The notes below the pieces were generated by a model. It was not told where the DNA came from. It ran no database searches and saw only the letters and a list, made by a program, of their open reading frames with translations. The position numbers were made by a program, and so were the translations under genes. This document shows, in pieces, positions 6,692-18,963 of a stretch of DNA of 64,000 nt. Within the stretch, counting starts at the first letter, position 1; each line of letters begins with the position of its first letter. The stretch is from Salisapilia sapeloensis CBS 127946 (Eukaryota > Protista > Oomycota), in contig JAADVB010000032.1 in the NCBI GenBank assembly GCA_023334545.1, positions 1 to 64,000 of the forward strand, in the 5' to 3' direction.

Positions 6692-7507
6692 ATGTCGTCG
6701 CGACTGCGTGTACTATTGCTCAAGTCTCCTGATGACAAGTACCAAAAGGCATTCGATGATGCATGCAACGAGTTACAGCTACCGTGCCAAGTCGATATCT
6801 CTTTTACAGAAGTACTTGAATTCAGTTTCGTCAATCTTGACGCCTTGCAAGACAAGTTGCGCAACCTCCAGCGCTACAGCGGGGTCATGATCACTAGTCC
6901 ACGTGGCACATCTGCACTCGCACAAGCCCTCTCTTCGCTTGAGGAGTCTACAAAAGCTACGGCACTCGACCAATTGCAATCTTCTCATATCCCGATCTTT
7001 GCAGTTGGGCAAGCGACAGCATTGGAACTTACTTCCAACTGGAACATACCTTGTTTGGGCACATCGACTGGCTCTGCCGAACAGCTATCAGCGTTTTTAC
7101 ATGAACAGAATGGATTGCCGGAAGCTGCAAAGGAGAAACCAATGCTCTTTATTACTGGACAAACGCATAGTGATACCTTACCAAATAGCTTTCATAGCAG
7201 GAACTTGGAGCTAGAGGAGCTCATCGTGTACAAGACAGACGTGAAGGAAAATGTGGATGTGCCAGAAGTCGATTGGATCGGTTTCTTTAGTCCGAGTGGA
7301 TTAAAGGCAGTGCATAATAAGGAATTACAGTGGGAACTAATGAACAAAGCTGCGATTGGGAAGACGACAGAGACTGCGATGGCCAAGTTGGCACAGGAAC
7401 GTCAGGAAGAGCATTGGAAAGCTGATGTTGTCCCTGAAAAACCGACACCAACTCTACTTGCCAAAGCGATACTCTCATTCCAGTTTGACAAATCTGCTTC
7501 GCAATAA
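6692..7507 (+). CDS. UROS: Uroporphyrinogen-III synthase (HEM4 family)
   Basis: Single-exon 271-aa ORF with HemD/UROS motifs: VLLLKS, YSGVMITSPRG, IFAVGQATA, G+AEQL, LEELIVYKT, WIGFFSPSG, AAIGKTT, PEKPTP..L. Confidence 0.9.
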   Translation: MSSRLRVLLLKSPDDKYQKAFDDACNELQLPCQVDISFTEVLEFSFVNLDALQDKLRNLQRYSGVMITSPRGTSALAQALSSLEESTKATALDQLQSSHIPIFAVGQATALELTSNWNIPCLGTSTGSAEQLSAFLHEQNGLPEAAKEKPMLFITGQTHSDTLPNSFHSRNLELEELIVYKTDVKENVDVPEVDWIGFFSPSGLKAVHNKELQWELMNKAAIGKTTETAMAKLAQERQEEHWKADVVPEKPTPTLLAKAILSFQFDKSASQ

Positions 7508-7891: not shown

Positions 7892-8029
7892 CTCGACAAC
7901 GGTTATTCGATCGTTTTGAGCCGCTGCTTCTTGTGTCGCTATTCTTATAGACCAATTGTATAACGATAAATTCTTTCGAGACAGCATATCTTGAAAGGTC
8001 GTAAGCAGCATCTACCGACTCCTTTGCTC

Positions 8030-11000
8030 ATGGACTGGAAATCACCGGATAGTAGTGATCTAGACGAACACGATGTCGATGATATTGAATATATCTTTGA
8101 CTCATCTGCAATGCATCGATCTTCTCCGAGTGCTGGCAAGTTTCAAGTTGGTCAGAACTGGAAATCGGCACTTTGTGTCACGTCACTCTACGACTCATAT
8201 CTCCAAGTGATGGAAGAGAATAAGACTTTAAAGAGCAAGTTAAAGGAGGTACAGAAGAGGCCGTCAAAAGATGCTCAGATACATCCGTTGGAAAAGAAGA
8301 GTGGCCGTAAGGAATGTCGAAAACCTATTACGAATGCATCGAAGGACACGGTGGAGCAAGAGCTGATAGAGAGTGAAAAGGAACAATCGGAGCAACGTCT
8401 ACAATATCTTGAGCGTGAAGTCGCTAGGTGGAAATCACTTTATGAAAAGGAAAAGAAGAAAGCACAAGATAGGGTCGATCGAGATCCTCTGACAGCGCAA
8501 CGACAAGCCATGTCGGCTCAATCTCTTCAGCATGCTTTAGATGAACAAGTGCATACGAATCAAGAGCTGACGTTAACATGTGAAAGATTACAATTTATGA
8601 ATGAAAGAATGAAGGAAACGCATGATGAACGCATACAAGAGTTGGAGACTCAGCTCGCAAGTTTCCAGACGTCTCAAGACGAGATGAAAAAAGCAAATAT
8701 GATGGCTATCATTCAGCGAATGGCAAACGCGAACTTGTATCGTGCATTTCGAAATTGGATGAAGCATACGCACGTGGAAGTAGGTCGGAACGCACATCAA
8801 GATCAAGTACAGTTGCTACAGCAGCAATTGGAAAGTGAGAGGCACCATATGCGTGCAACGTACATTCGGAAACTGTATTTAGACCGGACAAAAAGATGTC
8901 TCCATCGATATTATACAGCTTGGCGATCTGTTTACAAAGCTCAAAGGACTAGGAAGGATGCGATTGTGTATATGCGTACCAAGTCTACGAAGCATATCCG
9001 ATTGAGTGCATTTAGCCATTGGCGGGTACAGATTGAAAACCTTGTAAATCATCGCAACAGTCTGCTGGCAATGGTATGTCGCTTGCAAAAGTACCACTTC
9101 CGTACATGCTATCGGAAATGGGCAAACGAAGTGTTTGTTCGTCAGCACATGCTTCAGTCGAATCAGCAAAGAGCGGAACATGACGAAAAGAACAAGGAGT
9201 TGACAAGTACATTGGATACTGCAAACCAAAAGCTATTACAGGCCCATGAAGACCTATGTCAATATCAAGAAGAGATCAAGCGTTTGCGTCAGATATGTAA
9301 TAAAGAGCAAGAGGAAAGAGCTCGGCATGAAACAAAGGTAAAAGAGCGTTTGGCATCTTTCTTTCGAAAGAACAATGACGCTTACCTCCTTCGTTCGACA
9401 TTCGAGAGTTGGGTTCTCTCTACTAGTCAACAAGTACAGCGTCAAGTGCAGATACGGAACGTGGCAGCGGAGCTAAATCGAAAGAAATTATGCCTGTATG
9501 TTCGACAGTGGCATAAAAGTACGTCAGAGAAAAGGATGAAGCATCAAGTGCTTTTACATGCAGTCACACGAATGCGATATGCGATTGTCATTCGATGTTT
9601 TCAAAGCTGGAAAGCAAATGTAGAGAATAAGAGAGAGAAAAAGGCACTTGTGAATCGAGTTATCTATCGCTGGAAAAAGCTTCAGATTCTCCAAGTATTC
9701 AATTCATGGAAGTCACATACGGAAGTAGTAGTGTCGACTCGCCGATCTCTTGATCGACTAGTTCTTCTATTTGTAAAGATGCAAGTAGGCATGGGATGGA
9801 AGCAGTGGGTGGATGTATCAGACGAGATGGCGAAGGAGACTAAAGATCGTTTACGTTTGGAGCAGGAGAAAGAGCGAAAACGTGAACTAGAAGAGATTAA
9901 ACGGTCTATATTGACGTTAAACTCATACTTTACGATGTGGAAGGGTGCTATACGGTTAAAAGCAACGCATATGAAGATACTCCAAAAGTGGGGTGTTCGA
10001 TGCAACAGCAACTTGCAGAAGACGTACTGGAGACTGTGGAAACAAAGCATAAGTGAGCAAAAAGAGCATCGCATAAAACTCAAAAAGTGGATTCGTCGAT
10101 GGAAAGTCGTGAAGCTTCAAAAAGCTTGGACGCAGTGGATAGTACAAGGAATGCGTCTCGAAAATGCTGATAAAGTAACTAATGTCGCAAACCAATACAA
10201 CGTTCGTTTGGAGGAGCTAGAACAAAGCTTAAAGCAACGACAGGAGAAAGAAGTCGAGCAACAGAGGGAGAGGGAGATGGCGGATAATACTTATAGTGCT
10301 GCACTGCAAGTCAAAGATCGTATCGTGTCAGAGAAGGATGCGAGTAAACGACGGTATGCCCAAGCCTTGATGAAGATCTTTACTTCCAAGCAGAACGGTC
10401 GTTTAGTAGCCACTGTATTTCGCTGTTGGAAGTGTTTTGTAGATGAGAATTTAGCACTAAAAGCCAAGGTGATGTCATTCCTACGTCAACAAGACACGAC
10501 CGTCGTTCAGCGCATTTTTACGCAATGGAGAACAAGTTACCAACGTCTTAGAGGTATGAAGAAAGCGCTTGGACTGCTGCACACGTACATTGGTGCAAGT
10601 TATGTCGATCGCTGCTTTAGTAGTTGGAAGTACTACATTCATCTCGAACAAACCATCAAGCTATTTGCAACAGCATTCGCGATGACTTGTGACCAGTACG
10701 TTTTACAAACGACATTTCGCCAGTGGCAAACTGAAGCACATGCACGTCGAGTCATGCGTTCAACCGTCCAACGTCTTCTCGTTCAATCTGCATACTTAGA
10801 TGTGCAACATGCTTTTTCAAAATGGACAAGAGTAATGATGGAAGCACAGCGGGAGGAGATGGTTCACGAAAAGGAGCAAAGGCTACGGTTAGTACAAGAA
10901 AAGATTGTATATCGATGGGGTTGTCGATCTATACGTATGGTTTTTCATGCCTGGAAAGTTTATGTGGGAGTTAAGCGTAGGATGAATCAAGGGTACATTT

Positions 11001-14000
11001 TACTTTACAACTTTTCCAGCAAACAACTGCTTGCAGCAGTGCTTATTGCTTGGAAAGAAGACCATAGCAGACGACAACAGATTAAACAAGTACTTGAGCT
11101 TCGATTTCAGATCTATGCATCGGGTGTGAAGAGTATTTGGTTCCATCAATGGAGGAATACAACTACCTTCTTACGAACATGTGAAATTACCACACTTCGT
11201 AATCGTAATGCTGAGCAACTCCTTACTCTCCAAAATAACGGAAGAGAGCTCGAGCAAATGTTGATGGAGTTGAATCATAAGCGAGCGGACCTAGAGACAC
11301 ATGAGCTACGGAAGCGATCAGATCACTTTCTTCTTAAGCGAGTCTCGGCAAGTTGTGCGTTGATTCGATCGTTTTATACTTGGCGCATCATTCATGTCCG
11401 CCTTATCTTTCATCGTAACGAAGTTAAACGCTTAATGAATATGAACATGCTCAAGCTGACTCGAAGATTATACAACGCATGGAAACGTTTTTGGTATGAC
11501 AGTACGAAAAGGTCTAGGATAGTAGAAGCTAAGTACCGTTCAGCTTGTGATCAGTGTCTGCGTTCTTGCTTTAGCAAGTGGCTAGACTTCATCGTCACGA
11601 CTGGAATCAATAGACAAAAGACAGACAAACTACAATGTCGAGCAAGGCTTCGGTGTATGCGTCAATGCTTCGACGAGTGGTGCCACAGCCTACGTCAAAT
11701 AGATCGAGCACGAGTCATTTGGACAAAGGTGACGACGAATGCGTGTCATGGAAAACTGCATGCAGCCTTTGACAAGTGGAAGGATGACGTAGAAACTATG
11801 AACAGAATGGAAAAGGATAAGGAAGACCGACAGAAAAAGCTTATGGCGTATCTGATGGACAAAGACGAAATGAGACTGAGCGATGTGATGGATCGATGGA
11901 AGTCGCATACGAATGAGCGAAGGAATCTTCGCCTTGAAGTGAATCACAGATACAAATTGCATTGTCGGACGCTTTTGCAGCGTATATGGGATGATTGGAT
12001 CGGCTATATAGAACGAGAAAAACAACAGTGCACTGGTATCAATCGCACTGTTCAAATATGGCAACGGCGTCGTGAGCGATCTGCCTGGACGCAATGGACA
12101 CGGGTAGTTGCATTCTTGAACAAGCAGGAAATGGCTCAGCAGCAGCATGATCTTTTGGCACAAGTTGACAGTTTCTCCACCTCACTAAAAGAAAAGTGTG
12201 AGCAGTACGAGCAGTCCGAAGCTCATTTGAAAGCAACAAAAGAAAGGCTGCTAGAGGTGGAACAAGAGCTGAGTCACCGAACGAAGCAGCAAGAGATACA
12301 AGATAGCTATGCAACCGATAAATTTACAAAGATGAGGATGGTAACGAAGCTTTTGTACCTTCGCCAGGACCAGCTATCGACAGCTAAAGTCCAAGCTTTT
12401 CAGAAATGGCTAAGCTTTATCCGTGATATGAGCTTTCTCGAGCGTACGTTTGGAAAGATAATCAATATCGTTCGGCATGCGACTACAAGAAGAGGCTTTC
12501 GAACATGGAAATTTCATCTACTGCAGCACGCTGGGTTGGAAGCTCTTCAACGTCGTGTAAAGCAGCGTCAGTTGAAACGTGCCGTGAAATGCTTTAGACT
12601 TGTGTGGCAAAGACACATTCGACTGAAGCGATTACTTTTATCAAGGATGATAAAGAACGGTCAAGCTTCGCTTTCACAAGTTCGTTTGCATTTTAAATTG
12701 TGGCAAACTTCAGCTGCGCTCATGTCCAAAACAATCGAGCAAGCTATTGACCATAATGCGTTGTATTCAAAGCTCGATCGCTACAAAGGTCAACTTCAGA
12801 ACTTGACATTAAATAAATGGTGCTGGCTTGCATATCGACGAAGACTGGGACAAATGAAAGTCTTCTTTGATGTATTACGAGAGAAGCAAACAGGCAAGCG
12901 TGCTGTATTGTTAGCAATGCGCCAACAAGGCGAGCGGAAGGGTACACATCGATATAGGCCAAGTCATGTGCAAGTCAATGGAAGCATGCTATCCCAAGAA
13001 GAGCAGCATTTGCTTACTACTATATCACATTCTCTTGGAACTTTCTTCACTGCCATTGGAAAAAGCAAACGACTAATTGAAGTCTTTACGTACGTCAATA
13101 GCATAGGGAGTCAGCTTTTTGATGGTTGCTCGTCGGTGCTTTTTCTATTGGACACGCAGCGTAACGAGCTCTGGGCACAGCAGACAGACGAGAGTATATT
13201 GCACTTTGCTTCTTCACTCGGAATCACCGGACATGCTGTTAGTACCAAATTTCCAATCTTTGTGGAAGATGCGATGCACGACTTTCGGTATAATCCGATT
13301 GTTGACTATTTAGTCCTCTCGCAGTTTATGAAAAAGGGGATGAGCATGTCTGGAGGCTTGAACCATCATACAACCAGCTTGTGCTCTCAGGACACGGTGG
13401 CTTGTATATTTGCAGTACCTTTACTTTCTGTAAATGGTAACCCTGTCGGAGTAGTCGAGCTTGCCTTCGAAGTCAAGGATAAGAACACCAATATGAGTGA
13501 CAGACTACAAGCACGATGTGTCCAACTTGTTGGTACGATCACTGCAAAGTATTTGGAATCGCTCTTTGATGGCATGACTCGACATGCTAACGACTCGAAG
13601 CTAGCTTTGGAGAGAAATAGGTTCACAAAACTCTTTTATCAATGTAAGAATTGGCGAAAATATTATTCTGCCATGGATCGCAAAGTCGCTCGTACGGAGG
13701 ATCAATTGCAAATTCTCGCGAGAAGTGAAGAAGAATTATCGTCAAGTAACCAAAAGCTCGAGAAGGCTTTAAAAGACCTAGAAAAGAAATATCAACAGGC
13801 TCATGACCAAAAGCAAGAAGCATTTGGACGAGCAGCTACTTGTGAGCAAGAGATATCGACTCTACATGACAAAATATCGGAGCTCCAACAGAGCATTCGC
13901 AAGCATCGCAAAGAGCTGAAGAGGAGGGAAGTGGAACTCACGAATGCTGTGAGTCAGAATGAAAATACTGACCTCACCCGTTTGCTATGGAGAGCCACGG

Positions 14001-14269
14001 ATGGACACACCAACGATGCAGATAACGACAGGTTGTCGAGAAAGAGCCACGACGGAGAGAAGGAAAACAGTTTAGAAGCATACAGACTACTAAAAGCTGA
14101 TCAAGCAAGTTTAAAGAATAAACTCGCTCGGGTTGAATCCGACTCCAAAGTGCTTGTGAACGCCGTTCACGTCGCCTGCACTCACCAAGGAGAGCTTCCA
14201 GTGTCTCTGCAGCAGGAAGTTGACCGAATTACGAAGAGAATGACGAAGGTATCGCAGAATAGTCGATGA
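8030..14269 (+). CDS. Giant Sfi1-like (centrin-binding) repeat coiled-coil protein with a C-terminal GAF domain
   Basis: Uninterrupted ORF of about 2,080 aa; first ATG 8030. About 30 L-x3-F-x2-W-K/R motifs spaced 33 aa. GAF-like segment at about 13010-13560 (VLFLLDTQRNELW...GITGHAVSTKFPIFVEDAMHDFRYNPIVD...IFAVPLLSVNGNPVGVVEL), then coiled coil. Confidence 0.8.
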   Translation: MDWKSPDSSDLDEHDVDDIEYIFDSSAMHRSSPSAGKFQVGQNWKSALCVTSLYDSYLQVMEENKTLKSKLKEVQKRPSKDAQIHPLEKKSGRKECRKPITNASKDTVEQELIESEKEQSEQRLQYLEREVARWKSLYEKEKKKAQDRVDRDPLTAQRQAMSAQSLQHALDEQVHTNQELTLTCERLQFMNERMKETHDERIQELETQLASFQTSQDEMKKANMMAIIQRMANANLYRAFRNWMKHTHVEVGRNAHQDQVQLLQQQLESERHHMRATYIRKLYLDRTKRCLHRYYTAWRSVYKAQRTRKDAIVYMRTKSTKHIRLSAFSHWRVQIENLVNHRNSLLAMVCRLQKYHFRTCYRKWANEVFVRQHMLQSNQQRAEHDEKNKELTSTLDTANQKLLQAHEDLCQYQEEIKRLRQICNKEQEERARHETKVKERLASFFRKNNDAYLLRSTFESWVLSTSQQVQRQVQIRNVAAELNRKKLCLYVRQWHKSTSEKRMKHQVLLHAVTRMRYAIVIRCFQSWKANVENKREKKALVNRVIYRWKKLQILQVFNSWKSHTEVVVSTRRSLDRLVLLFVKMQVGMGWKQWVDVSDEMAKETKDRLRLEQEKERKRELEEIKRSILTLNSYFTMWKGAIRLKATHMKILQKWGVRCNSNLQKTYWRLWKQSISEQKEHRIKLKKWIRRWKVVKLQKAWTQWIVQGMRLENADKVTNVANQYNVRLEELEQSLKQRQEKEVEQQREREMADNTYSAALQVKDRIVSEKDASKRRYAQALMKIFTSKQNGRLVATVFRCWKCFVDENLALKAKVMSFLRQQDTTVVQRIFTQWRTSYQRLRGMKKALGLLHTYIGASYVDRCFSSWKYYIHLEQTIKLFATAFAMTCDQYVLQTTFRQWQTEAHARRVMRSTVQRLLVQSAYLDVQHAFSKWTRVMMEAQREEMVHEKEQRLRLVQEKIVYRWGCRSIRMVFHAWKVYVGVKRRMNQGYILLYNFSSKQLLAAVLIAWKEDHSRRQQIKQVLELRFQIYASGVKSIWFHQWRNTTTFLRTCEITTLRNRNAEQLLTLQNNGRELEQMLMELNHKRADLETHELRKRSDHFLLKRVSASCALIRSFYTWRIIHVRLIFHRNEVKRLMNMNMLKLTRRLYNAWKRFWYDSTKRSRIVEAKYRSACDQCLRSCFSKWLDFIVTTGINRQKTDKLQCRARLRCMRQCFDEWCHSLRQIDRARVIWTKVTTNACHGKLHAAFDKWKDDVETMNRMEKDKEDRQKKLMAYLMDKDEMRLSDVMDRWKSHTNERRNLRLEVNHRYKLHCRTLLQRIWDDWIGYIEREKQQCTGINRTVQIWQRRRERSAWTQWTRVVAFLNKQEMAQQQHDLLAQVDSFSTSLKEKCEQYEQSEAHLKATKERLLEVEQELSHRTKQQEIQDSYATDKFTKMRMVTKLLYLRQDQLSTAKVQAFQKWLSFIRDMSFLERTFGKIINIVRHATTRRGFRTWKFHLLQHAGLEALQRRVKQRQLKRAVKCFRLVWQRHIRLKRLLLSRMIKNGQASLSQVRLHFKLWQTSAALMSKTIEQAIDHNALYSKLDRYKGQLQNLTLNKWCWLAYRRRLGQMKVFFDVLREKQTGKRAVLLAMRQQGERKGTHRYRPSHVQVNGSMLSQEEQHLLTTISHSLGTFFTAIGKSKRLIEVFTYVNSIGSQLFDGCSSVLFLLDTQRNELWAQQTDESILHFASSLGITGHAVSTKFPIFVEDAMHDFRYNPIVDYLVLSQFMKKGMSMSGGLNHHTTSLCSQDTVACIFAVPLLSVNGNPVGVVELAFEVKDKNTNMSDRLQARCVQLVGTITAKYLESLFDGMTRHANDSKLALERNRFTKLFYQCKNWRKYYSAMDRKVARTEDQLQILARSEEELSSSNQKLEKALKDLEKKYQQAHDQKQEAFGRAATCEQEISTLHDKISELQQSIRKHRKELKRREVELTNAVSQNENTDLTRLLWRATDGHTNDADNDRLSRKSHDGEKENSLEAYRLLKADQASLKNKLARVESDSKVLVNAVHVACTHQGELPVSLQQEVDRITKRMTKVSQNSR

Positions 14270-14322
14270 GACTTGCCTTCGTATACATAGATAGAAGAGA
14301 AATAAAGCGATAACGTTTTCTA

Positions 14323-16308
14323 TTACGCATGCAATTGGAGCTGAATCTCACATTTTTCCTTCCTGGCCTTGTTCAACCTGTCGTTCATAATGTCCACCAA
14401 AAGCTTATGCGTTCCAAGTGGTTCCGTTACGAGCATGTTGACCTGTGGATGCTGCTTTCGTGCTTCCTCTAGTATCTCTGCGATATCTCCTCCTGGACCA
14501 GCATGACGTCCGTTGGAGAGGAAGAGTAGTGTGACAACGACAGTGCCACTAGTGATGTTGTAGTGTTCTAAAGCAGTTTCCAACAGAGGGCCGTTAAAGT
14601 CGTATTCCTCTCCGTCCCTCCTTTCCATACAGGTAGTCGCGATCATCGATACATCCTGAACAGACTGGTTCTGTGGTAGAACTTCACGTAGCTGTTGCGC
14701 CACAAACTCTCGCGTCTCATGCACACGCTGGTTGGGCGTGCCGTGGTCCAGTACAAGTACGTGTACTGGTCCAGTGGTCGACTCGTTCTGTGCCAAGCAC
14801 GAAGCAATTCGGTCCGATAGGATATGAGCGACTCTGTCATCACTTTGCAGCGTCATATCAATCAGCGGGGAAGCGCATCTAACATCAAGTGCCCCGAGAG
14901 CATCTTTCTCAACGTCCGTTTCATTCACAAAGCGATCCCAACACTTGTGAACGACGGACGGAAGAAAGTCAGTTAGTGTCGCGCTAACACCAAAGAACTC
15001 TGGAACGATGACAACATGTTTTTCATCGTGAGGATATCGCTTCACAAAGTCCGATAGGACCATCTCAAAGTTTTTCGCTGGAATGTCATGCAGTTTCGAG
15101 GAATCCACTCGATTGGAAAAGCGGAAGCTACATGGAACGACATACGAGTCTGTCTTTTCGCTGAGAGCAAACGATAGCTTACGGAGATCCAAGAATGGTT
15201 CTGGACGCAACGACCCGATGTTTGCGACGATGACGAGCTCTCTCTTCCGTCGCTTGGACTCGTTTGAAAATGCTTTTAAAGACTTCTGAACACCAGCGTA
15301 CACCATCTCAGCTTCGGTGTTGTAATACTTCTCTGTACGCCATTGATCCAATAGCCCGTGTCTGTACGTAGGATGGATCAAGTCGGCATCGAGCTCATCG
15401 TACAGCTTAGCATTGGACACGACTTTAAATTCAGCGTAAAACGTCTTTGCCATGGCACTCATACCCTTTTCTGCCTCCTCCCATGGCACTGCAGGTGGTA
15501 CGTCGTTACCCAAAAGTTCATGCGCAAAGGCAGCGACTTCATGACCTGGTGCTGGCTCATCGTCACACACGTTAAAAATAGTAGTTCCAAGAGTGGCACT
15601 TTTACGAGCTGATAGGAGAAGGACTTGAGTGATGTCGTCGACATGCGTTCGGTTGAAAGAGCGGTTGGGAAGGTATACACGAGGCTTGGAGGAGTCTTGT
15701 GCTTTGACTAGCGGACCACGGCCGGGTCCATAGATTCCGGCAAGTCGAAAGACCTGAACAGGAAGCTCTTTACCGACATCTAGCCACTGCTTTTCAGCGA
15801 TGATCCGACGTTGGTTGCGAGCTACAGTTGTGGTCGTCGGATTCGACTCATACACGACTGCTCCGTCACTATCTCCGTAGACACCAATGGTAGAGAGGTA
15901 GCCAACCCATTCTAACTTTGATTCTTCACTACTTGAAGCCTTAGATGCATCTAAAATTGTTTGCTGGAAGTGTGATAGCACGGGATCCATCGACACTTCT
16001 TCATCGTCCTTCGGTACTGCTTTACTGCGAAATGGTGGAATGGAGATGATCATGTGTGTTGCATTTTTAATGCAATCCTCCACAGGTACTGAGTTGGATG
16101 CACTCCATCCTTCATCACCATCGAACAGAAAAATATTCGATGACGTGAACTCGGCATACTTGGAAATGAGTGAGTCTGCAGCCTCTTGGCTGCGTACAGT
16201 ACCTGCAATCGAGTAGCCTAGTTGACTGAATGCTAGTGCAGCCTGCGTGGAGCTGTATCCAAGTCCGAAGACGAAGAGAGACTTGTTGTTGGTCGAAGAC
16301 GAGCTCAT
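14323..16308 (-). CDS. Fusion of an atypical SDR/NAD(P)-dependent epimerase (YeeZ/SDR_a5-like) and a CbiX/SirB-type class II chelatase
   Basis: Single-exon 661-aa ORF. N-terminal half: LFVFGLGYSS, GTVRS, YLSTIGVYGD, FRLAGIYGPGR, FNRTHVDDI, FNVCDDEP. C-terminal half from about 15240: VANIGSLRP, VLVLDHGTP, CMERRDGEEYDFNGPLLE, LFLSNGRHAGPGGDIAEI. Confidence 0.8.
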   Translation of the reverse strand: MSSSSTNNKSLFVFGLGYSSTQAALAFSQLGYSIAGTVRSQEAADSLISKYAEFTSSNIFLFDGDEGWSASNSVPVEDCIKNATHMIISIPPFRSKAVPKDDEEVSMDPVLSHFQQTILDASKASSSEESKLEWVGYLSTIGVYGDSDGAVVYESNPTTTTVARNQRRIIAEKQWLDVGKELPVQVFRLAGIYGPGRGPLVKAQDSSKPRVYLPNRSFNRTHVDDITQVLLLSARKSATLGTTIFNVCDDEPAPGHEVAAFAHELLGNDVPPAVPWEEAEKGMSAMAKTFYAEFKVVSNAKLYDELDADLIHPTYRHGLLDQWRTEKYYNTEAEMVYAGVQKSLKAFSNESKRRKRELVIVANIGSLRPEPFLDLRKLSFALSEKTDSYVVPCSFRFSNRVDSSKLHDIPAKNFEMVLSDFVKRYPHDEKHVVIVPEFFGVSATLTDFLPSVVHKCWDRFVNETDVEKDALGALDVRCASPLIDMTLQSDDRVAHILSDRIASCLAQNESTTGPVHVLVLDHGTPNQRVHETREFVAQQLREVLPQNQSVQDVSMIATTCMERRDGEEYDFNGPLLETALEHYNITSGTVVVTLLFLSNGRHAGPGGDIAEILEEARKQHPQVNMLVTEPLGTHKLLVDIMNDRLNKARKEKCEIQLQLHA

Positions 16309-16572
16309 GAGCGGCGTATGCTGGTTGTGCTAAGATGTTCTTCTTGGCAATAAAATGCTCATAAAACGTCATAATTATGTTTTATTCATTGCTACCCTAC
16401 TCCGTTGAAGAAAAGATTTATTTATTCTTTACATATTTACAAAAGTATCAGAAGTATTTACATATCTTTGTTAAGTTGCGAGGAGGTCGAGTTATAATTA
16501 GCTTTTCCTGCTGAAAATGGCCTTCGTGAGTTTCCTTTTTGCTGCTGGAGGAAAGGCTGACAAGTTACTTGT

Positions 16573-18963
16573 TTGTTCTGGATACAGGGACTTGAAGCGC
16601 TCTTTTGCATGATGTGGATGTTAGATAAAGCCAAGCAATGTTCATGCAAAGATTACCCGAAGAGGTTTTGCGTCATTGTGCCGTTTATCGCAGTGTTATT
16701 GCTATTTGCGACTGATGTCTTGGATCTTTGGTTTAAAACTGTATGGATCGGGCCCATAGACTCGTTTTCTTTCCGAACGACAGAGGTTATTGTTATCGAT
16801 GATACCAGGTCCATTACGAGTGAGTCATGGAAGAGCAAAACGGGTGTGATTATGTCTTCGTGGGAAGCATATTCTCAGCTATGCAGTGAAATTTATCCAG
16901 ATCAAAAGGAGAGAATACATTCGTTCCTAGGCAAAGATTGCCACACCGAGAAACTTGCCAGTCAAGATCTTGGTACAAGGAACTATGAAGCAGATTCAGG
17001 ACAAGTCGTTGAGCAAATGGTATTCTCTGCGAGTATTCGAGCTGATTCGGTCGCTTGGGCTAGCTGCATGCTGCTTCCCCCTAATTTGAGGCCGCCACTT
17101 TGCTATGAAGATATCGTGAGCGAATACGCTGAACGATATGCTCTTGGACCTGTTCACGACCAACCAGCTATACCAGACGATCCTATATCTCAAAAGGAAC
17201 TGCTATCGATGATTCAGCTTTTAAGCAGCACACCACGACTTCATAGTTTCGTCTGCTCAGTTGCAGTGAATTTGAATGAGCCAGAGATTGACAACAGAAT
17301 TTATTATGTTTGCGCGCTTGGTGGTACCCCGCGCCGAATTGCACTGATTGGGCACTATGCTCACGGTGTCAGGCATTTACTGAAGCAGCATGCATGGATG
17401 GCAAAAGATGCTTTATCTGCGCTAGGCATGCAAATATCGTTAAGACAAATGGGAGAGTCTACATACAACATAATATCGCAAAAGAACCATTCCATCCTCA
17501 TTGAAGAATCGTTAGCCGTAGATATATCAGCATTTGGAGGTCTGTATGCGTTATCGATCGCAATCGACACCTGCTTGCTTGTTCTGCACATATTCAGCGC
17601 GATAAAAACTTACAAGCAAAACTTAATCACATCTGAGTACATTACCTCTATCTCTAACAGTGCCGATGTTAAATGGACTGAGCAGTGGACTAATGTTTAT
17701 CGCTCATTGTATCGAAGTCCGATCATCATGTGTATGACGATCGTGTCTGGAATAGTGGCATGGTTTGATGTTACTTCAGTGGCTGCAATTTCTCCGGATA
17801 AGTATGGTGTGTATGGAAATGGGCTTGTGCTGCTCGCACTTGTTCGACTGTGGATGGTGATCGTGTGTATTTTCAATATGATTTGGGATGTAATAGTTAT
17901 TGTCATTAGTGAGACAAGAGCTTACTACGTAACACAGAAAACCTTTGTAAAATCCAGCGAGATTGCTTTTACATGCGGTCTTGTTGCCTTGTTGGATGCA
18001 TCTCACATGCAAGGACGTATCCTGCAAAAGCGTGATGTGGAGGTTCAGCGAATGTGGAATTACCACTCATTTCCGAATTCACATGCATATGCAAATGTGT
18101 TCACTGAGGATGATTGGGAACAGAATCCAACATTGCAATGGAGATGTGTATTTGGTCCCTTCCTCAATTACATTGCAAAATGCGTCATCGCTATCATCAT
18201 TATCGCATTTGTTCGCGGTCTATATTATGGCATATATCTCGCACGCCGACACAGTGCTGCAAACGAATCGGTTAGTGATTCTATAGACTCGGGCCAGTCG
18301 GAAGGAAAAGTAATTCCACTTGACTTGGATAATCTCGATGATCTCACGAATGTACTGGAAGCTCCATCACTGGGCGCAACCTGGGATGGAGCTAGAACGA
18401 GTGAATCGTACTCCCGATTGCCGATAGAAGTGTTGATGCGAAGTCCGATTCGAGCACGATCTCTTGTTCGAAATTCAGTTCATCTCGAGTTTGAAGACGA
18501 TAGCAGCCAAATGATTGTACTACCGAGCATTGTGTACGACTTTGGTATCGCGGTCCAAGGAGACCAGCTTACGAAGCGCTTTGGATTCATTGGTACTGTC
18601 TTCCATTCACGCTTGAATATCGAAAACTTGCTTTTAGATATTGAACCACAAGAAGTCAAAGTTCAAGAGAATGTGTTTACGGCGTACTCTGCGCCACCGA
18701 AATCCATCCACCGAACCACTTCCTTCTATCAGAGCTCTCCTCGATCACCAAAAGTTGTACCAAAGTTCACAAGCCCGAAGTCCAGCTTGGAAAGCTCTCA
18801 CAAAATCAAAAGTGCTACGGAAGTAGACTTTGCAAATGCACTTCAACGGCGGCTCGAAGAAGAATCGAAACAACCGAAATTAACCAAAGCTAAATCTGTT
18901 CGTCGAAGAAAGAGCATGGCAGATTTTTCTGCCGAAGCTCTAGAGATACATAAAGAGCTATAG
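16573..18963 (+). CDS. Multi-pass transmembrane protein resembling an oomycete-specific family; unknown function
   Basis: 796-aa ORF with an N-terminal TM helix, a large extracellular/luminal region with conserved-looking cysteines, 5-6 further hydrophobic helices and a Ser/Lys-rich cytosolic tail. True start may be the ATG near 16609. Confidence 0.75.
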   Translation: MFWIQGLEALFCMMWMLDKAKQCSCKDYPKRFCVIVPFIAVLLLFATDVLDLWFKTVWIGPIDSFSFRTTEVIVIDDTRSITSESWKSKTGVIMSSWEAYSQLCSEIYPDQKERIHSFLGKDCHTEKLASQDLGTRNYEADSGQVVEQMVFSASIRADSVAWASCMLLPPNLRPPLCYEDIVSEYAERYALGPVHDQPAIPDDPISQKELLSMIQLLSSTPRLHSFVCSVAVNLNEPEIDNRIYYVCALGGTPRRIALIGHYAHGVRHLLKQHAWMAKDALSALGMQISLRQMGESTYNIISQKNHSILIEESLAVDISAFGGLYALSIAIDTCLLVLHIFSAIKTYKQNLITSEYITSISNSADVKWTEQWTNVYRSLYRSPIIMCMTIVSGIVAWFDVTSVAAISPDKYGVYGNGLVLLALVRLWMVIVCIFNMIWDVIVIVISETRAYYVTQKTFVKSSEIAFTCGLVALLDASHMQGRILQKRDVEVQRMWNYHSFPNSHAYANVFTEDDWEQNPTLQWRCVFGPFLNYIAKCVIAIIIIAFVRGLYYGIYLARRHSAANESVSDSIDSGQSEGKVIPLDLDNLDDLTNVLEAPSLGATWDGARTSESYSRLPIEVLMRSPIRARSLVRNSVHLEFEDDSSQMIVLPSIVYDFGIAVQGDQLTKRFGFIGTVFHSRLNIENLLLDIEPQEVKVQENVFTAYSAPPKSIHRTTSFYQSSPRSPKVVPKFTSPKSSLESSHKIKSATEVDFANALQRRLEEESKQPKLTKAKSVRRRKSMADFSAEALEIHKEL

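What the first reader, a model, noticed from the sequence alone, without database searches (positions are those of the whole stretch)
14323..16308. Atypical SDR fused to a bacterial-type CbiX/SirB tetrapyrrole chelatase in a eukaryote
Seen: one intronless ORF joins a YeeZ/SDR_a5-like Rossmann domain (GLGYS; R-x3-R-x2-AE where YxxxK would be) to a two-lobed class II chelatase (NIGSLRP, DHGTP, MERRDGEEYDFN.PLLE, LFLSNGRHAGPGGDI) that keeps candidate metal-binding His residues. Established: CbiX/SirB/CfbA insert Co, Fe or Ni into sirohydrochlorin; eukaryotes do not make cobalamin, and fungi use Met8 as a bifunctional dehydrogenase/chelatase for siroheme. Inference: this may be an independently built Met8/CysG analogue, in which the SDR oxidises precorrin-2 and the chelatase inserts iron. 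It could also act in another tetrapyrrole pathway, and may derive from horizontal transfer.
Basis: partly seen in the sequence, partly recalled or inferred. Interest (0 to 1): 0.75.

Follow-up and report, generated by a model that had tools for sequence, protein, structure and literature searches.

The report
Siroheme iron chelatase fused to SDR
This oomycete gene joins an unusual NAD(P)-binding enzyme to a bacterial-type enzyme that very probably puts iron into siroheme, the cofactor of sulfite reductase; the fusion is old and widespread rather than a recent transfer, and the role of the first half is still open.

Summary
An intronless 661-aa ORF (14323-16308, minus strand) joins a 3ius-type atypical SDR, with Arg164/Arg168 in place of Tyr/Lys, to a two-lobed class II chelatase. 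RNA-like contigs from four runs each cover the whole ORF as one unit.

The fusion is not a recent transfer. It occurs in all oomycete orders sampled, a thraustochytrid and Euglena, and it sits in conserved oomycete synteny.

The chelatase half is very probably the terminal siroheme enzyme (sirohydrochlorin ferrochelatase):
- It has a high-confidence chelatase fold, with B. subtilis SirB as the best match.
- Both metal-site histidines (His522, His602) lie in the C-terminal lobe.
- A free-standing bacterial homologue lies directly after a uroporphyrinogen methyltransferase gene and next to sulfite reductase.
- The histidine motifs have decayed in Hyaloperonospora, Plasmopara and the Saprolegniales, whose relatives are documented to lack sulfite reductase, and in Albugo, Bremia and Peronosclerospora. 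They are intact in Peronospora farinosa, whose relative P. effusa keeps it.

The "Met8 analogue" reading is only partly supported:
- The SDR half stays conserved where the chelatase half decays.
- Its cofactor motif looks NADP-type.
- In alphaproteobacteria it is linked to queG, never to cbiX.

A precorrin-2 dehydrogenase role is therefore possible but unproven, and it cannot be the SDR's only job.

The parts
14323..16308 (-). Complete intronless ORF, 661 aa plus stop: atypical SDR fused to a class II chelatase
14252..16334 (-). Extent of the longest transcript-like contig (about 26 nt of 5' leader and about 70 nt of 3' trailer)
   Evidence: record 2 of run X1. Records 8, 11 and 16 of the other runs end within 3 nt at the 5' side.
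15325..16284 (-). N-terminal extended-SDR domain (aa 9-328), 3ius family
   Evidence: phmmer to 3ius E 7e-50; Foldseek TM 0.88-0.92 by target, 36-38% identity; alignment A3 with alphaproteobacterial SDRs, 54% mean column identity
16249..16266 (-). Dinucleotide-binding motif GLGYSS (G15 and G17 invariant)
16192..16212 (-). End of strand beta-2, SIAGTVR, with invariant Arg39 and no acidic residue: NADP(H)-type signature (inference)
   Evidence: R39 is invariant in A1, A3 and A4; coordinates; cofactor preference inferred from general SDR knowledge
15793..15819 (-). RNQRRIIAE: Arg164 and Arg168 replace the SDR catalytic Tyr and Lys; Glu172 is invariant
   Evidence: alignment to MoeE5; invariance
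15250..15324 (-). Helical linker (aa 329-353) between the halves
   Evidence: helix 332-348 in the full-length model, block pLDDT 79-90
14869..15249 (-). Chelatase N-terminal lobe (aa 354-480). The position of the CbiX histidine is Ile (NIGSLRP), so this lobe has no metal site.
14344..14868 (-). Chelatase C-terminal lobe (aa 481-655) carrying the putative active site
   Evidence: Pfam CbiX at 569-642; model pLDDT 94; Foldseek SirB/CbiK/HemH hits
14734..14748 (-). DHGTP with His522, first metal/catalytic histidine
   Evidence: invariant in the free-standing subfamily (H170 of A2); aligned to the GHGS motif of B. subtilis SirB; lost in obligate biotrophs
14593..14628 (-). MERRDGEEYDFN, signature of this CbiX subfamily, on a flexible loop or lid
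   Evidence: M, E, R, R, Y, D, F, N invariant in A2; local pLDDT dip to 63
14497..14511 (-). GRHAG with His602, second histidine
   Evidence: invariant in A2 and A4; aligned to GRH of the CbiX protein 3lyh

Best explanation
The gene encodes a cytosolic two-enzyme protein that is ancestral to oomycetes and shared with thraustochytrids and euglenids.

Chelatase half. The C-terminal half is a SirB/CbiX-type class II chelatase. Its active site, His522 and His602, lies in the C-terminal lobe, as in CbiK and Paracoccus CbiX. It most likely inserts Fe2+ into sirohydrochlorin, making siroheme for the organism's assimilatory sulfite reductase.

SDR half. The N-terminal half is a 3ius-family atypical SDR. 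It probably binds NADP(H) and has two arginines where SDRs carry Tyr and Lys. It is packed against the chelatase in a compact arrangement. It may carry out the preceding oxidation of precorrin-2 to sirohydrochlorin, the arginines holding the carboxylates of the macrocycle. It must also have a function that does not depend on siroheme.

Shown here: domain identities, fold, motif conservation, a single transcript, an ancient fusion, and co-decay of the chelatase motifs with loss of sulfite reductase. Inferred: substrate, metal, and any dehydrogenase activity.
For: Fold:
- The AF2 model of the C-terminal half has pLDDT 94.2 and pTM 0.91.
- Its best PDB matches are B. subtilis SirB (E 5e-9, TM 0.74-0.80 by target), then DR2241, CbiK, HemH and Paracoccus CbiX 4ccs.

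Active site:
- H522 and H602 are invariant in 27 subfamily members and align to the histidine motifs of SirB and CbiX.
- Paracoccus CbiX, a proven siroheme ferrochelatase, also uses two C-lobe histidines (PMC4063343).

Bacterial context: in Cephaloticoccus primus the free-standing homologue P0174 directly follows a TP_methylase (SUMT) gene. That pair is divergent from a NIR_SIR sulfite reductase gene and two PAPS-reductase genes.

Natural experiment:
- The motifs are intact in the window, in all Phytophthora, Pythium and Globisporangium, in Euglena and in Hondaea.
- They are destroyed in Hyaloperonospora (both species), Plasmopara halstedii, Bremia, Peronosclerospora and Albugo, and damaged in Achlya and Aphanomyces.
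- The literature reports sulfite reductase absent in H. arabidopsidis, Pl. halstedii and Saprolegnia, but present in Peronospora effusa (PMC6264045; PMC3681718; PMC10234565). Peronospora farinosa and P. destructor keep intact motifs.
- Identity to P. sojae, C-half minus N-half, averages +0.4 points in 16 intact species and -14.2 in five degenerate downy mildews.

Fusion:
- One transcript-like contig covers both halves.
- The full-length model has pTM 0.84.
- 17 of 18 fusion C-halves form one clade in species-tree order.
- Synteny with the giant neighbouring gene is kept in P. sojae and Pythium.

Unverified first-stage notes say the same genome encodes sulfite reductase and a siroheme methyltransferase.
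Against: - No enzymology was done.
- Only one of seven bacterial contexts of the free-standing chelatase subfamily is informative.
- The sulfite reductase data and the motif data come from related but not always identical species (P. effusa versus P. farinosa; Saprolegnia versus Achlya and Aphanomyces).
- The decay events in downy mildews are not fully independent phylogenetically.
- Sequence similarity to solved chelatases is weak (profile E 5e-5 to 1e-3).
- Against a dehydrogenase role for the SDR: the catalytic Tyr and Lys are absent; Arg39 suggests NADP(H), whereas known precorrin-2 dehydrogenases use NAD+; no cbiX lies within 8 kb of the SDR in any of 80 alphaproteobacterial loci; the SDR half is fully conserved in Albugo, Hyaloperonospora and Plasmopara, where the chelatase is dead.
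Confidence: 0.68

Rival explanations
1. Full Met8/CysG-B analogue. The SDR half is a dedicated precorrin-2 dehydrogenase and the protein does nothing but make siroheme from precorrin-2.
For: - The two halves are fused in pathway order and packed compactly (pTM 0.84).
- The fusion is kept across more than three eukaryotic groups.
- Bali et al. state that Paracoccus has 'no obvious candidates' for the precorrin-2 dehydrogenase (PMC4063343), and this SDR family is abundant in alphaproteobacteria.
- The invariant arginines R164, R168, R188, R197 and R220 could bind the eight carboxylates of the substrate (inference).
Against: - The SDR half keeps all its invariant residues in Albugo, Bremia, Hyaloperonospora and Plasmopara, where the chelatase histidines are gone and sulfite reductase is reported lost. 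A siroheme-only enzyme should decay as a whole.
- The cofactor motif is NADP-type (inference).
- 0 of 80 bacterial SDR loci carry cbiX nearby, and none of the ten most frequent neighbour families scanned in Pfam is a tetrapyrrole methyltransferase.
- The Cephaloticoccus SUMT-CbiX-sulfite reductase cluster has no such SDR.
Confidence: 0.22
2. The SDR half works in a different pathway, tied in bacteria to the cobalamin-dependent tRNA enzyme QueG. Possibilities are NADPH-dependent handling of a corrinoid or tetrapyrrole cofactor, or of queuosine. The chelatase is a fused partner that shares only a cofactor class or compartment with it.
For: - queG lies upstream on the same strand in 28 of 80 alphaproteobacterial loci. 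It is directly adjacent in 18, and overlaps the SDR gene by 4 nt in Methyloligella.
- QueG-SDR fusion proteins P0062 and P0079 were confirmed by Pfam.
- The SDR is conserved in oomycetes that no longer need siroheme.
- Unverified notes say the genome has B12-handling genes.
Against: - In nine loci a TPR gene on the opposite strand separates queG from the SDR gene, so part of the linkage is synteny rather than an operon.
- Two thirds of the loci have no queG nearby.
- Fusions of overlapping genes can be assembly or frameshift artefacts.
- Eukaryotes have no QueG.
- No chemistry is proposed or tested.
Confidence: 0.3
3. The C-terminal half is not a chelatase but a tetrapyrrole-binding or carrier domain, like the CbiK-fold haem-binding protein FetB, or a corrinoid binder.
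For: FetB (9b86) appears among the profile and fold matches. The catalytically dead C-terminal halves persist as full-length ORFs in biotrophs, which hints at a structural role.
Against: - Both catalytic histidines are invariant wherever sulfite reductase is kept and are lost where it is not.
- The Cephaloticoccus homologue lies in a SUMT and sulfite reductase cluster.
- The top fold matches are true chelatases.
Confidence: 0.07
4. Recent bacterial horizontal transfer, contamination, or a gene-model artefact that joins two genes.
For: Both halves have their closest free-standing relatives in bacteria.
Against: - The flanking genes are eukaryotic, and synteny is conserved with P. sojae and Pythium oligandrum.
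- The fusion clade follows oomycete phylogeny.
- Single transcript-like contigs cover the ORF.
- Full-length fusions occur in the Euglena and other transcriptomes.
Confidence: 0.02

Closest known systems
Paracoccus pantotrophus CbiX (PDB 4ccs), the alphaproteobacterial sirohydrochlorin ferrochelatase (Bali et al. 2014, PMC4063343)
   Same: Two-lobed, single-chain class II chelatase of the CbiX family. The two essential histidines are in the C-terminal lobe. It makes siroheme although annotated as a cobalt chelatase. It has no Fe-S cluster motif.
   Different: It is only a distant fold match (Foldseek E 4e-5, 14% identity) and gives no sequence-level hit. The window protein belongs to another subfamily, marked by the invariant MERR-G-EYDFN loop, and is fused to an SDR.
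Bacillus subtilis / B. megaterium SirB (5zt7, 6jv6)
   Same: Best structural match (TM 0.74-0.80 by target). Same reaction proposed. The GHGS-type and GRH-type histidine motifs are shared.
   Different: SirB has its active site in the N-terminal lobe; here it is in the C-terminal lobe. SirB works with a separate SirC dehydrogenase. Identity is 11-13%.
Met8p / CysG-B / SirC (precorrin-2 dehydrogenase with or without ferrochelatase)
   Same: Possibly the same two consecutive reactions on one polypeptide.
   Different: There is no homology. Met8 and CysG-B use one Rossmann-type active site for both steps. Here there are two unrelated domains (extended SDR plus class II chelatase), and no Met8/CysG-B/SirC-type family appears in Pfam or NCBIfam.
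PDB 3ius, uncharacterised SDR of Silicibacter (Ruegeria) pomeroyi, and the alphaproteobacterial family around it
   Same: 36-44% identity over the whole N-terminal half. Same Arg-x3-Arg replacement of Tyr-x3-Lys, same GIYGPGR motif and same invariant residues.
   Different: The bacterial proteins are free-standing, about 290 aa, and often lie next to or are fused with queG. None is fused or adjacent to a chelatase.
Arabidopsis SirB and B. megaterium CbiX-L
   Same: CbiX-family chelatases acting on sirohydrochlorin. AtSirB is the eukaryotic precedent for a SirB-type siroheme enzyme.
   Different: Those carry Fe-S clusters bound by Cys motifs (PMC7242693 reference list; bioRxiv 2024.03.22.586315). 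The window protein has only scattered cysteines and no CxxC motif. It is cytosolic, with no targeting extension.

Membership tests
Class II chelatase, CbiX/SirB family (Pfam PF01903) | Profile match above the curated threshold | tested here: met
   46.2 bits against a cut-off of 22, aa 569-642; precomputed PF01903 on nearly all orthologues
Class II chelatase, CbiX/SirB family (Pfam PF01903) | Two alpha/beta lobes forming the chelatase fold | tested here: met
   Model pLDDT 94.2, pTM 0.91; SirB, CbiK, HemH and Paracoccus CbiX are all matched over about 300 columns
Class II chelatase, CbiX/SirB family (Pfam PF01903) | Pair of conserved histidines (GHGS-like and G-x-H motifs) in one lobe | tested here: met
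   H522 and H602 are invariant in A2 and A4 and aligned to the SirB and 3lyh motifs. The N-terminal lobe lacks them.
Sirohydrochlorin ferrochelatase (functional class EC 4.99.1.4) | Occurs together with siroheme-dependent enzymes and SUMT | tested here: met
   Motif integrity tracks sulfite reductase presence across oomycetes; SUMT, CbiX and sulfite reductase form a cluster in Cephaloticoccus; the notes on this genome's own sulfite reductase and SUMT are unverified
Sirohydrochlorin ferrochelatase (functional class EC 4.99.1.4) | Fe2+ insertion into sirohydrochlorin; complementation of cysG or met8 | not testable with these tools
   Needs a bench assay
Sirohydrochlorin nickel chelatase CfbA (NCBIfam NF033198) | Equivalog score at or above the cut-off | tested here: not met
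   26.7 bits against a cut-off of 120
Met8 / CysG-B / SirC precorrin-2 dehydrogenases | Homology to the Met8-type NAD-binding and siroheme synthase domains | tested here: not met
   No such family at E up to 1 in Pfam or NCBIfam. The N-terminal half is an extended-SDR fold.
Met8 / CysG-B / SirC precorrin-2 dehydrogenases | NAD+-dependent oxidation of precorrin-2 | not testable with these tools
   Bench assay needed. The indirect evidence is mixed (see the rival explanations).
Extended SDR (NDP-sugar epimerase/dehydratase-like) | Rossmann fold with a glycine-rich dinucleotide motif | tested here: met
   G15-x-G17 invariant; fold matches 3ius, MoeE5 and GalE-type enzymes
Extended SDR (NDP-sugar epimerase/dehydratase-like) | Catalytic Tyr-x3-Lys | tested here: not met
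   R164 and R168 occupy these positions in the alignment to MoeE5 and are invariant in the family. It is therefore an atypical SDR.
3ius-type atypical SDR family (alphaproteobacterial) | Full-length similarity with the shared invariant residues (R164, R168, E172, GIYGPGR, R220, H222, D225) | tested here: met
   E 7e-50 to 3ius; 41-46% identity and 50 invariant columns in A3
Fe-S cluster-bearing CbiX-L / plant SirB | Cys motif (MxCxxC or similar) binding an Fe-S cluster | tested here: not met
   The cysteines, at aa 79, 248, 393, 456, 478, 504, 560 and 653, form no CxxC cluster

The most novel reading that the evidence does not exclude
By Rosetta-stone logic, the 3ius-family atypical SDR is the long-missing precorrin-2 dehydrogenase of organisms that use a stand-alone CbiX/SirB chelatase and lack Met8/CysG-B/SirC. 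These include many alphaproteobacteria (Bali et al. 2014: 'no obvious candidates') and perhaps plastid-bearing eukaryotes, whose papers name no enzyme for this step. It would be a moonlighting enzyme whose second, QueG-linked role explains why it survives in obligate biotrophs.
Probability: 0.2. Interest if true: 0.75.

Novelty: new variant of a known kind. Interest (0 to 1): 0.5.

Why it matters
Siroheme is required for sulfite and nitrite assimilation. How oomycetes, thraustochytrids and euglenids make it does not appear in any paper I could find, and databases label these proteins only as "NAD-dependent epimerase/dehydratase".

Assigning the chelatase half gives the terminal siroheme enzyme for these groups, which include major crop pathogens. 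It also gives a simple sequence marker, the DHGTP and GRHAG motifs, for whether a lineage still assimilates sulfate.

The differential decay of the two halves in obligate biotrophs is a clean natural experiment. It separates the functions of the two domains and shows that the SDR has an independent, conserved role.

If the SDR turns out to be a precorrin-2 dehydrogenase, it would fill a gap noted for alphaproteobacteria. If not, its link to QueG points to an uncharacterised partner of a cobalamin enzyme.

Tried and rejected
- Direct phmmer of the C-terminal half against the PDB gave only chance hits. A profile and a fold search were needed.
- Six of seven gene contexts of free-standing bacterial homologues were uninformative.
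- The idea of a tetrapyrrole gene cluster with the UROS gene 7 kb away was rejected. UROS is real (HEM4), but no HEM4 gene lies within 10 kb of the orthologue in P. sojae or Pythium.
- CfbA nickel chelatase and AvaA7 reductase (NCBIfam) were rejected as far below their cut-offs. The Longin_2 hit in Pfam was rejected as chance.
- Literature searches for oomycete or Euglena SirB, for YeeZ, and for QueG partners found no description of this fusion or of the SDR family's function.
- I found no explicit published statement that the plant precorrin-2 dehydrogenase is unknown. The plant papers read simply name no enzyme.
- A careful maximum-likelihood tree did not finish in the time allowed, so the quick tree was used.
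- The large representative-protein search was not used, because no claim here rests on the absence of relatives.
Full report
OBSERVATION. The window carries a 661-aa ORF on the minus strand at 14323..16308. Pfam finds CbiX (PF01903) at aa 569-642, 46.2 bits against a cut-off of 22. The N-terminal half matches the uncharacterised SDR 3ius of Silicibacter pomeroyi at E 7e-50. In the HMMER alignment to the SDR MoeE5, Arg164 lies opposite the catalytic Tyr and Arg168 opposite the Lys.

TRANSCRIPT. Four public runs (two samples, one study) each contain one contig that covers the ORF from about 14252-14339 to 16331-16334, with no mismatch and no joint. Separate contigs begin at 16449-16471 for the next gene, and the giant upstream gene appears only as low-depth scraps. 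The tool calls these runs RNA only by guess. However, 15 Mb runs that hold whole genes at very different depths and lack the intergenic DNA behave like transcriptomes. The two halves are thus one intronless unit.

SURROUNDINGS AND ORIGIN. The neighbours are eukaryotic: a 2092-aa Sfi1-like ORF lies tail-to-tail with the gene, and a 796-aa membrane protein lies head-to-head. Full-length fusions of the same architecture occur in the following:
- Phytophthora, Pythium, Globisporangium, Lagenidium, Peronospora, Bremia, Hyaloperonospora, Plasmopara and Albugo;
- Aphanomyces and Achlya;
- the thraustochytrid Hondaea;
- a Euglena gracilis transcript, and several unnamed transcriptome or metagenome proteins.

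The best identity to the window protein is only about 50%, so the window comes from an oomycete lineage that is not itself in the database. In P. sojae and Pythium oligandrum the orthologue is also a single exon and also lies tail-to-tail with a giant gene. A quick ML tree of the chelatase halves puts 17 of 18 fusion proteins in one clade (SH-aLRT 91). The oomycetes branch in species-tree order, and the window is nested among Pythium, Globisporangium and Phytophthora. One metagenomic fusion (P0057) groups instead with free-standing algal proteins. The fusion is therefore ancient. It was inherited vertically within oomycetes and is not a recent transfer or an artefact.

THE CHELATASE HALF.
- Relatives. 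Searched alone, the C-terminal half finds 270-300-aa free-standing two-lobed CbiX/SirB proteins of Verrucomicrobiota and Chromatiaceae at 34-39% identity.
- Shared motifs. The 27-sequence alignment A2 shows that this subfamily shares an N-terminal lobe without histidine (DNGS or NIGS). The C-terminal lobe has invariant DHG-P, MERR-G-EYDFN and GRHAG motifs.
- Sequence matches to solved structures. A profile of A2 reaches solved chelatases only weakly: 3lyh CbiX, B. subtilis SirB, CfbA and the haem-binding FetB. The alignments still pair His522 with the GHGS histidine of SirB and His602 with the GRH histidine of 3lyh.
- Fold. The AlphaFold model built on A2 is very confident (pLDDT 94.2, pTM 0.91). 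Foldseek returns B. subtilis SirB first (E 5e-9; TM 0.74-0.80 by target). DR2241, CbiK, protoporphyrin and coproporphyrin ferrochelatases, FetB and Paracoccus CbiX 4ccs follow. The refutation test "not a chelatase fold" fails.
- Active-site lobe. An active site in the C-terminal lobe has precedent in CbiK and in Paracoccus CbiX. That protein was annotated as a cobalt chelatase but proved to be the siroheme ferrochelatase, with essential His127 and His187 (PMC4063343).
- There is no Cys cluster for an Fe-S centre.

EVIDENCE FOR SIROHEME. Two independent lines support it.

First, gene context. In Cephaloticoccus primus the free-standing homologue P0174 sits 38 nt downstream of a TP_methylase (uroporphyrinogen methyltransferase) gene. 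The pair is divergent from a NIR_SIR sulfite reductase gene and two PAPS-reductase genes. The other six contexts examined were uninformative.

Second, a natural experiment. In an alignment of 52 fusion proteins the three C-lobe motifs fall into the groups below.

| Motif state | Lineages |
|---|---|
| Intact | the window; every Phytophthora, Pythium, Globisporangium and Lagenidium; Euglena; Hondaea |
| Destroyed | Hyaloperonospora brassicae and H. arabidopsidis, Plasmopara halstedii, Bremia, Peronosclerospora, Albugo laibachii |
| Partly destroyed | Peronospora belbahrii |
| Damaged | Achlya, Aphanomyces |

- The substitutions differ between lineages, which indicates separate decay.
- Published genome analyses report sulfite reductase absent from H. 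arabidopsidis and Pl. halstedii but present in Peronospora effusa (PMC6264045; PMC10234565). They report it lost in Saprolegnia parasitica (PMC3681718).
- In agreement with this, Peronospora farinosa and P. destructor keep perfect motifs.
- Identity to P. sojae, C-half minus N-half, averages +0.4 points in 16 intact Peronosporales and -14.2 in five degenerate downy mildews (Mann-Whitney p 0.001, not corrected for phylogeny). In Albugo the figures are 22.6% for the C-half against 58.2% for the N-half.
- First-stage notes on other pieces of this genome mention sulfite reductase (both subunits) and a siroheme methyltransferase. I could not check them, but they fit the intact motifs seen here.

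THE SDR HALF.
- It is 41-46% identical to thousands of roughly 290-aa alphaproteobacterial proteins and matches 3ius structurally (TM 0.88-0.92 by target).
- The invariant residues include G15, G17, R39, S139, R164, R168, E172, the GIYGPGR motif, R220, H222 and D225.
- Arg39 at the end of strand beta-2, with no acidic residue there, suggests NADP(H). This is an inference from general SDR knowledge. Known precorrin-2 dehydrogenases use NAD+.
- All invariant SDR residues persist in the obligate biotrophs whose chelatase is dead. The SDR therefore has a function independent of siroheme.
- In 80 alphaproteobacterial loci fetched with the SDR profile, tblastn found queG upstream on the same strand in 28. 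It is directly adjacent in 18. In nine, one TPR gene on the opposite strand lies between them. No cbiX was found in any locus. The common neighbours are QueG, a GST, DXS, IspA and others.
- QueG-SDR fusion proteins exist (P0062, P0079), and in Methyloligella the two genes overlap by 4 nt.
- QueG is a cobalamin and Fe-S enzyme. What the SDR would do for it is unknown, and I found no literature on it.

MECHANISM. I commit to the following. The C-terminal half is the sirohydrochlorin ferrochelatase of this organism. Its two C-lobe histidines bind Fe2+ and deprotonate the macrocycle, and the arginine-rich MERR loop probably acts as a lid over the carboxylates. Confidence is about 0.8 for this part.

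For the N-terminal half the leading single hypothesis remains precorrin-2 oxidation feeding the chelatase. This would explain a fusion in pathway order, a compact predicted arrangement (full-length pTM 0.84), and the absence of a known dehydrogenase in alphaproteobacteria that have this SDR. I give it only about 0.2-0.3, because of the conservation pattern, the NADP-type motif and the queG linkage. If it is true, it cannot be the SDR's only activity. The catalytically dead C-terminal halves remain full-length ORFs in biotrophs, which suggests that they still serve the SDR structurally.

COMPARISON AND NOVELTY. The protein is a member of the CbiX/SirB class II chelatase family (fold, Pfam and histidine pair all met) and of the 3ius-type atypical SDR family. 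It is not a member of the Met8/CysG-B/SirC family. At most it works like Met8 through two unrelated domains. Databases already list the architecture, and JGI labels some members [quoted passage not shown]. I found no paper describing it or its function. I rate it a new variant of a known kind, of moderate interest. The differential decay of the two halves and the possible identification of a missing dehydrogenase, or of a QueG partner, are the points worth following.

LIMITS.
- No enzymology was done.
- Species used for the motif data and for the sulfite reductase data are sometimes congeners rather than identical.
- The tree is a quick search.
- The RNA status of the runs is inferred.
- The notes on other parts of the genome are unverified.

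Noticed in passing
window 6692-7507 (+): A 271-aa ORF is a uroporphyrinogen-III synthase (Pfam HEM4, E 2e-27). It lies 7 kb from the chelatase gene, but no HEM4 gene lies within 10 kb of the orthologue in P. sojae or Pythium oligandrum. The proximity looks accidental.
   Followed up: partly
L004 4886-6867; L008-L087 (28 of 80 loci): In alphaproteobacteria there is a conserved GST-queG-SDR gene order, with the 3ius-type SDR directly after queG (4-nt overlap in Methyloligella). QueG-SDR fusion proteins also exist (P0062, P0079). This suggests an uncharacterised partner of the cobalamin-dependent epoxyqueuosine reductase.
   Followed up: partly
L091 259-6014: Cephaloticoccus primus (Verrucomicrobia) has a compact cluster: two PAPS-reductase genes and a NIR_SIR sulfite reductase on one strand, and SUMT plus the CbiX homologue on the other. 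No recognisable precorrin-2 dehydrogenase is in the cluster.
   Followed up: partly
window 16573-18963 (+): A 796-aa multi-pass membrane protein lies head-to-head with the fusion gene. It has no Pfam family at E 0.001 but is covered by transcript-like contigs at depths similar to or higher than the fusion gene.
   Followed up: no
window 7991-14269 (+): The giant 2092-aa Sfi1-like ORF appears in the same runs only as short low-depth contigs, so it seems far less expressed than its neighbours. Its tail-to-tail position with the fusion gene is conserved in P. sojae (2047 aa) and Pythium oligandrum (1574 aa).
   Followed up: partly
P0026/P0043 (P. capsici, same contig); P0019/P0044/P0049 (Peronospora farinosa); P0036 (Lagenidium): Some oomycete assemblies carry two or three gene models of the fusion. 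The Lagenidium model (969 aa) also has an EamA domain, which is probably a merged gene model.
   Followed up: no
P0054 (Euglena gracilis transcript): The Euglena orthologue has an N-terminal extension of about 40 aa with a hydrophobic stretch, as expected for organelle targeting. The oomycete proteins start directly at the Rossmann fold.
   Followed up: no
Atlas clusters: Language-model neighbours of the SDR half include clusters from diatoms (448 aa), haptophytes (326 aa) and cyanobacteria. Free-standing relatives may therefore exist in plastid-bearing lineages that use SirB.
   Followed up: no
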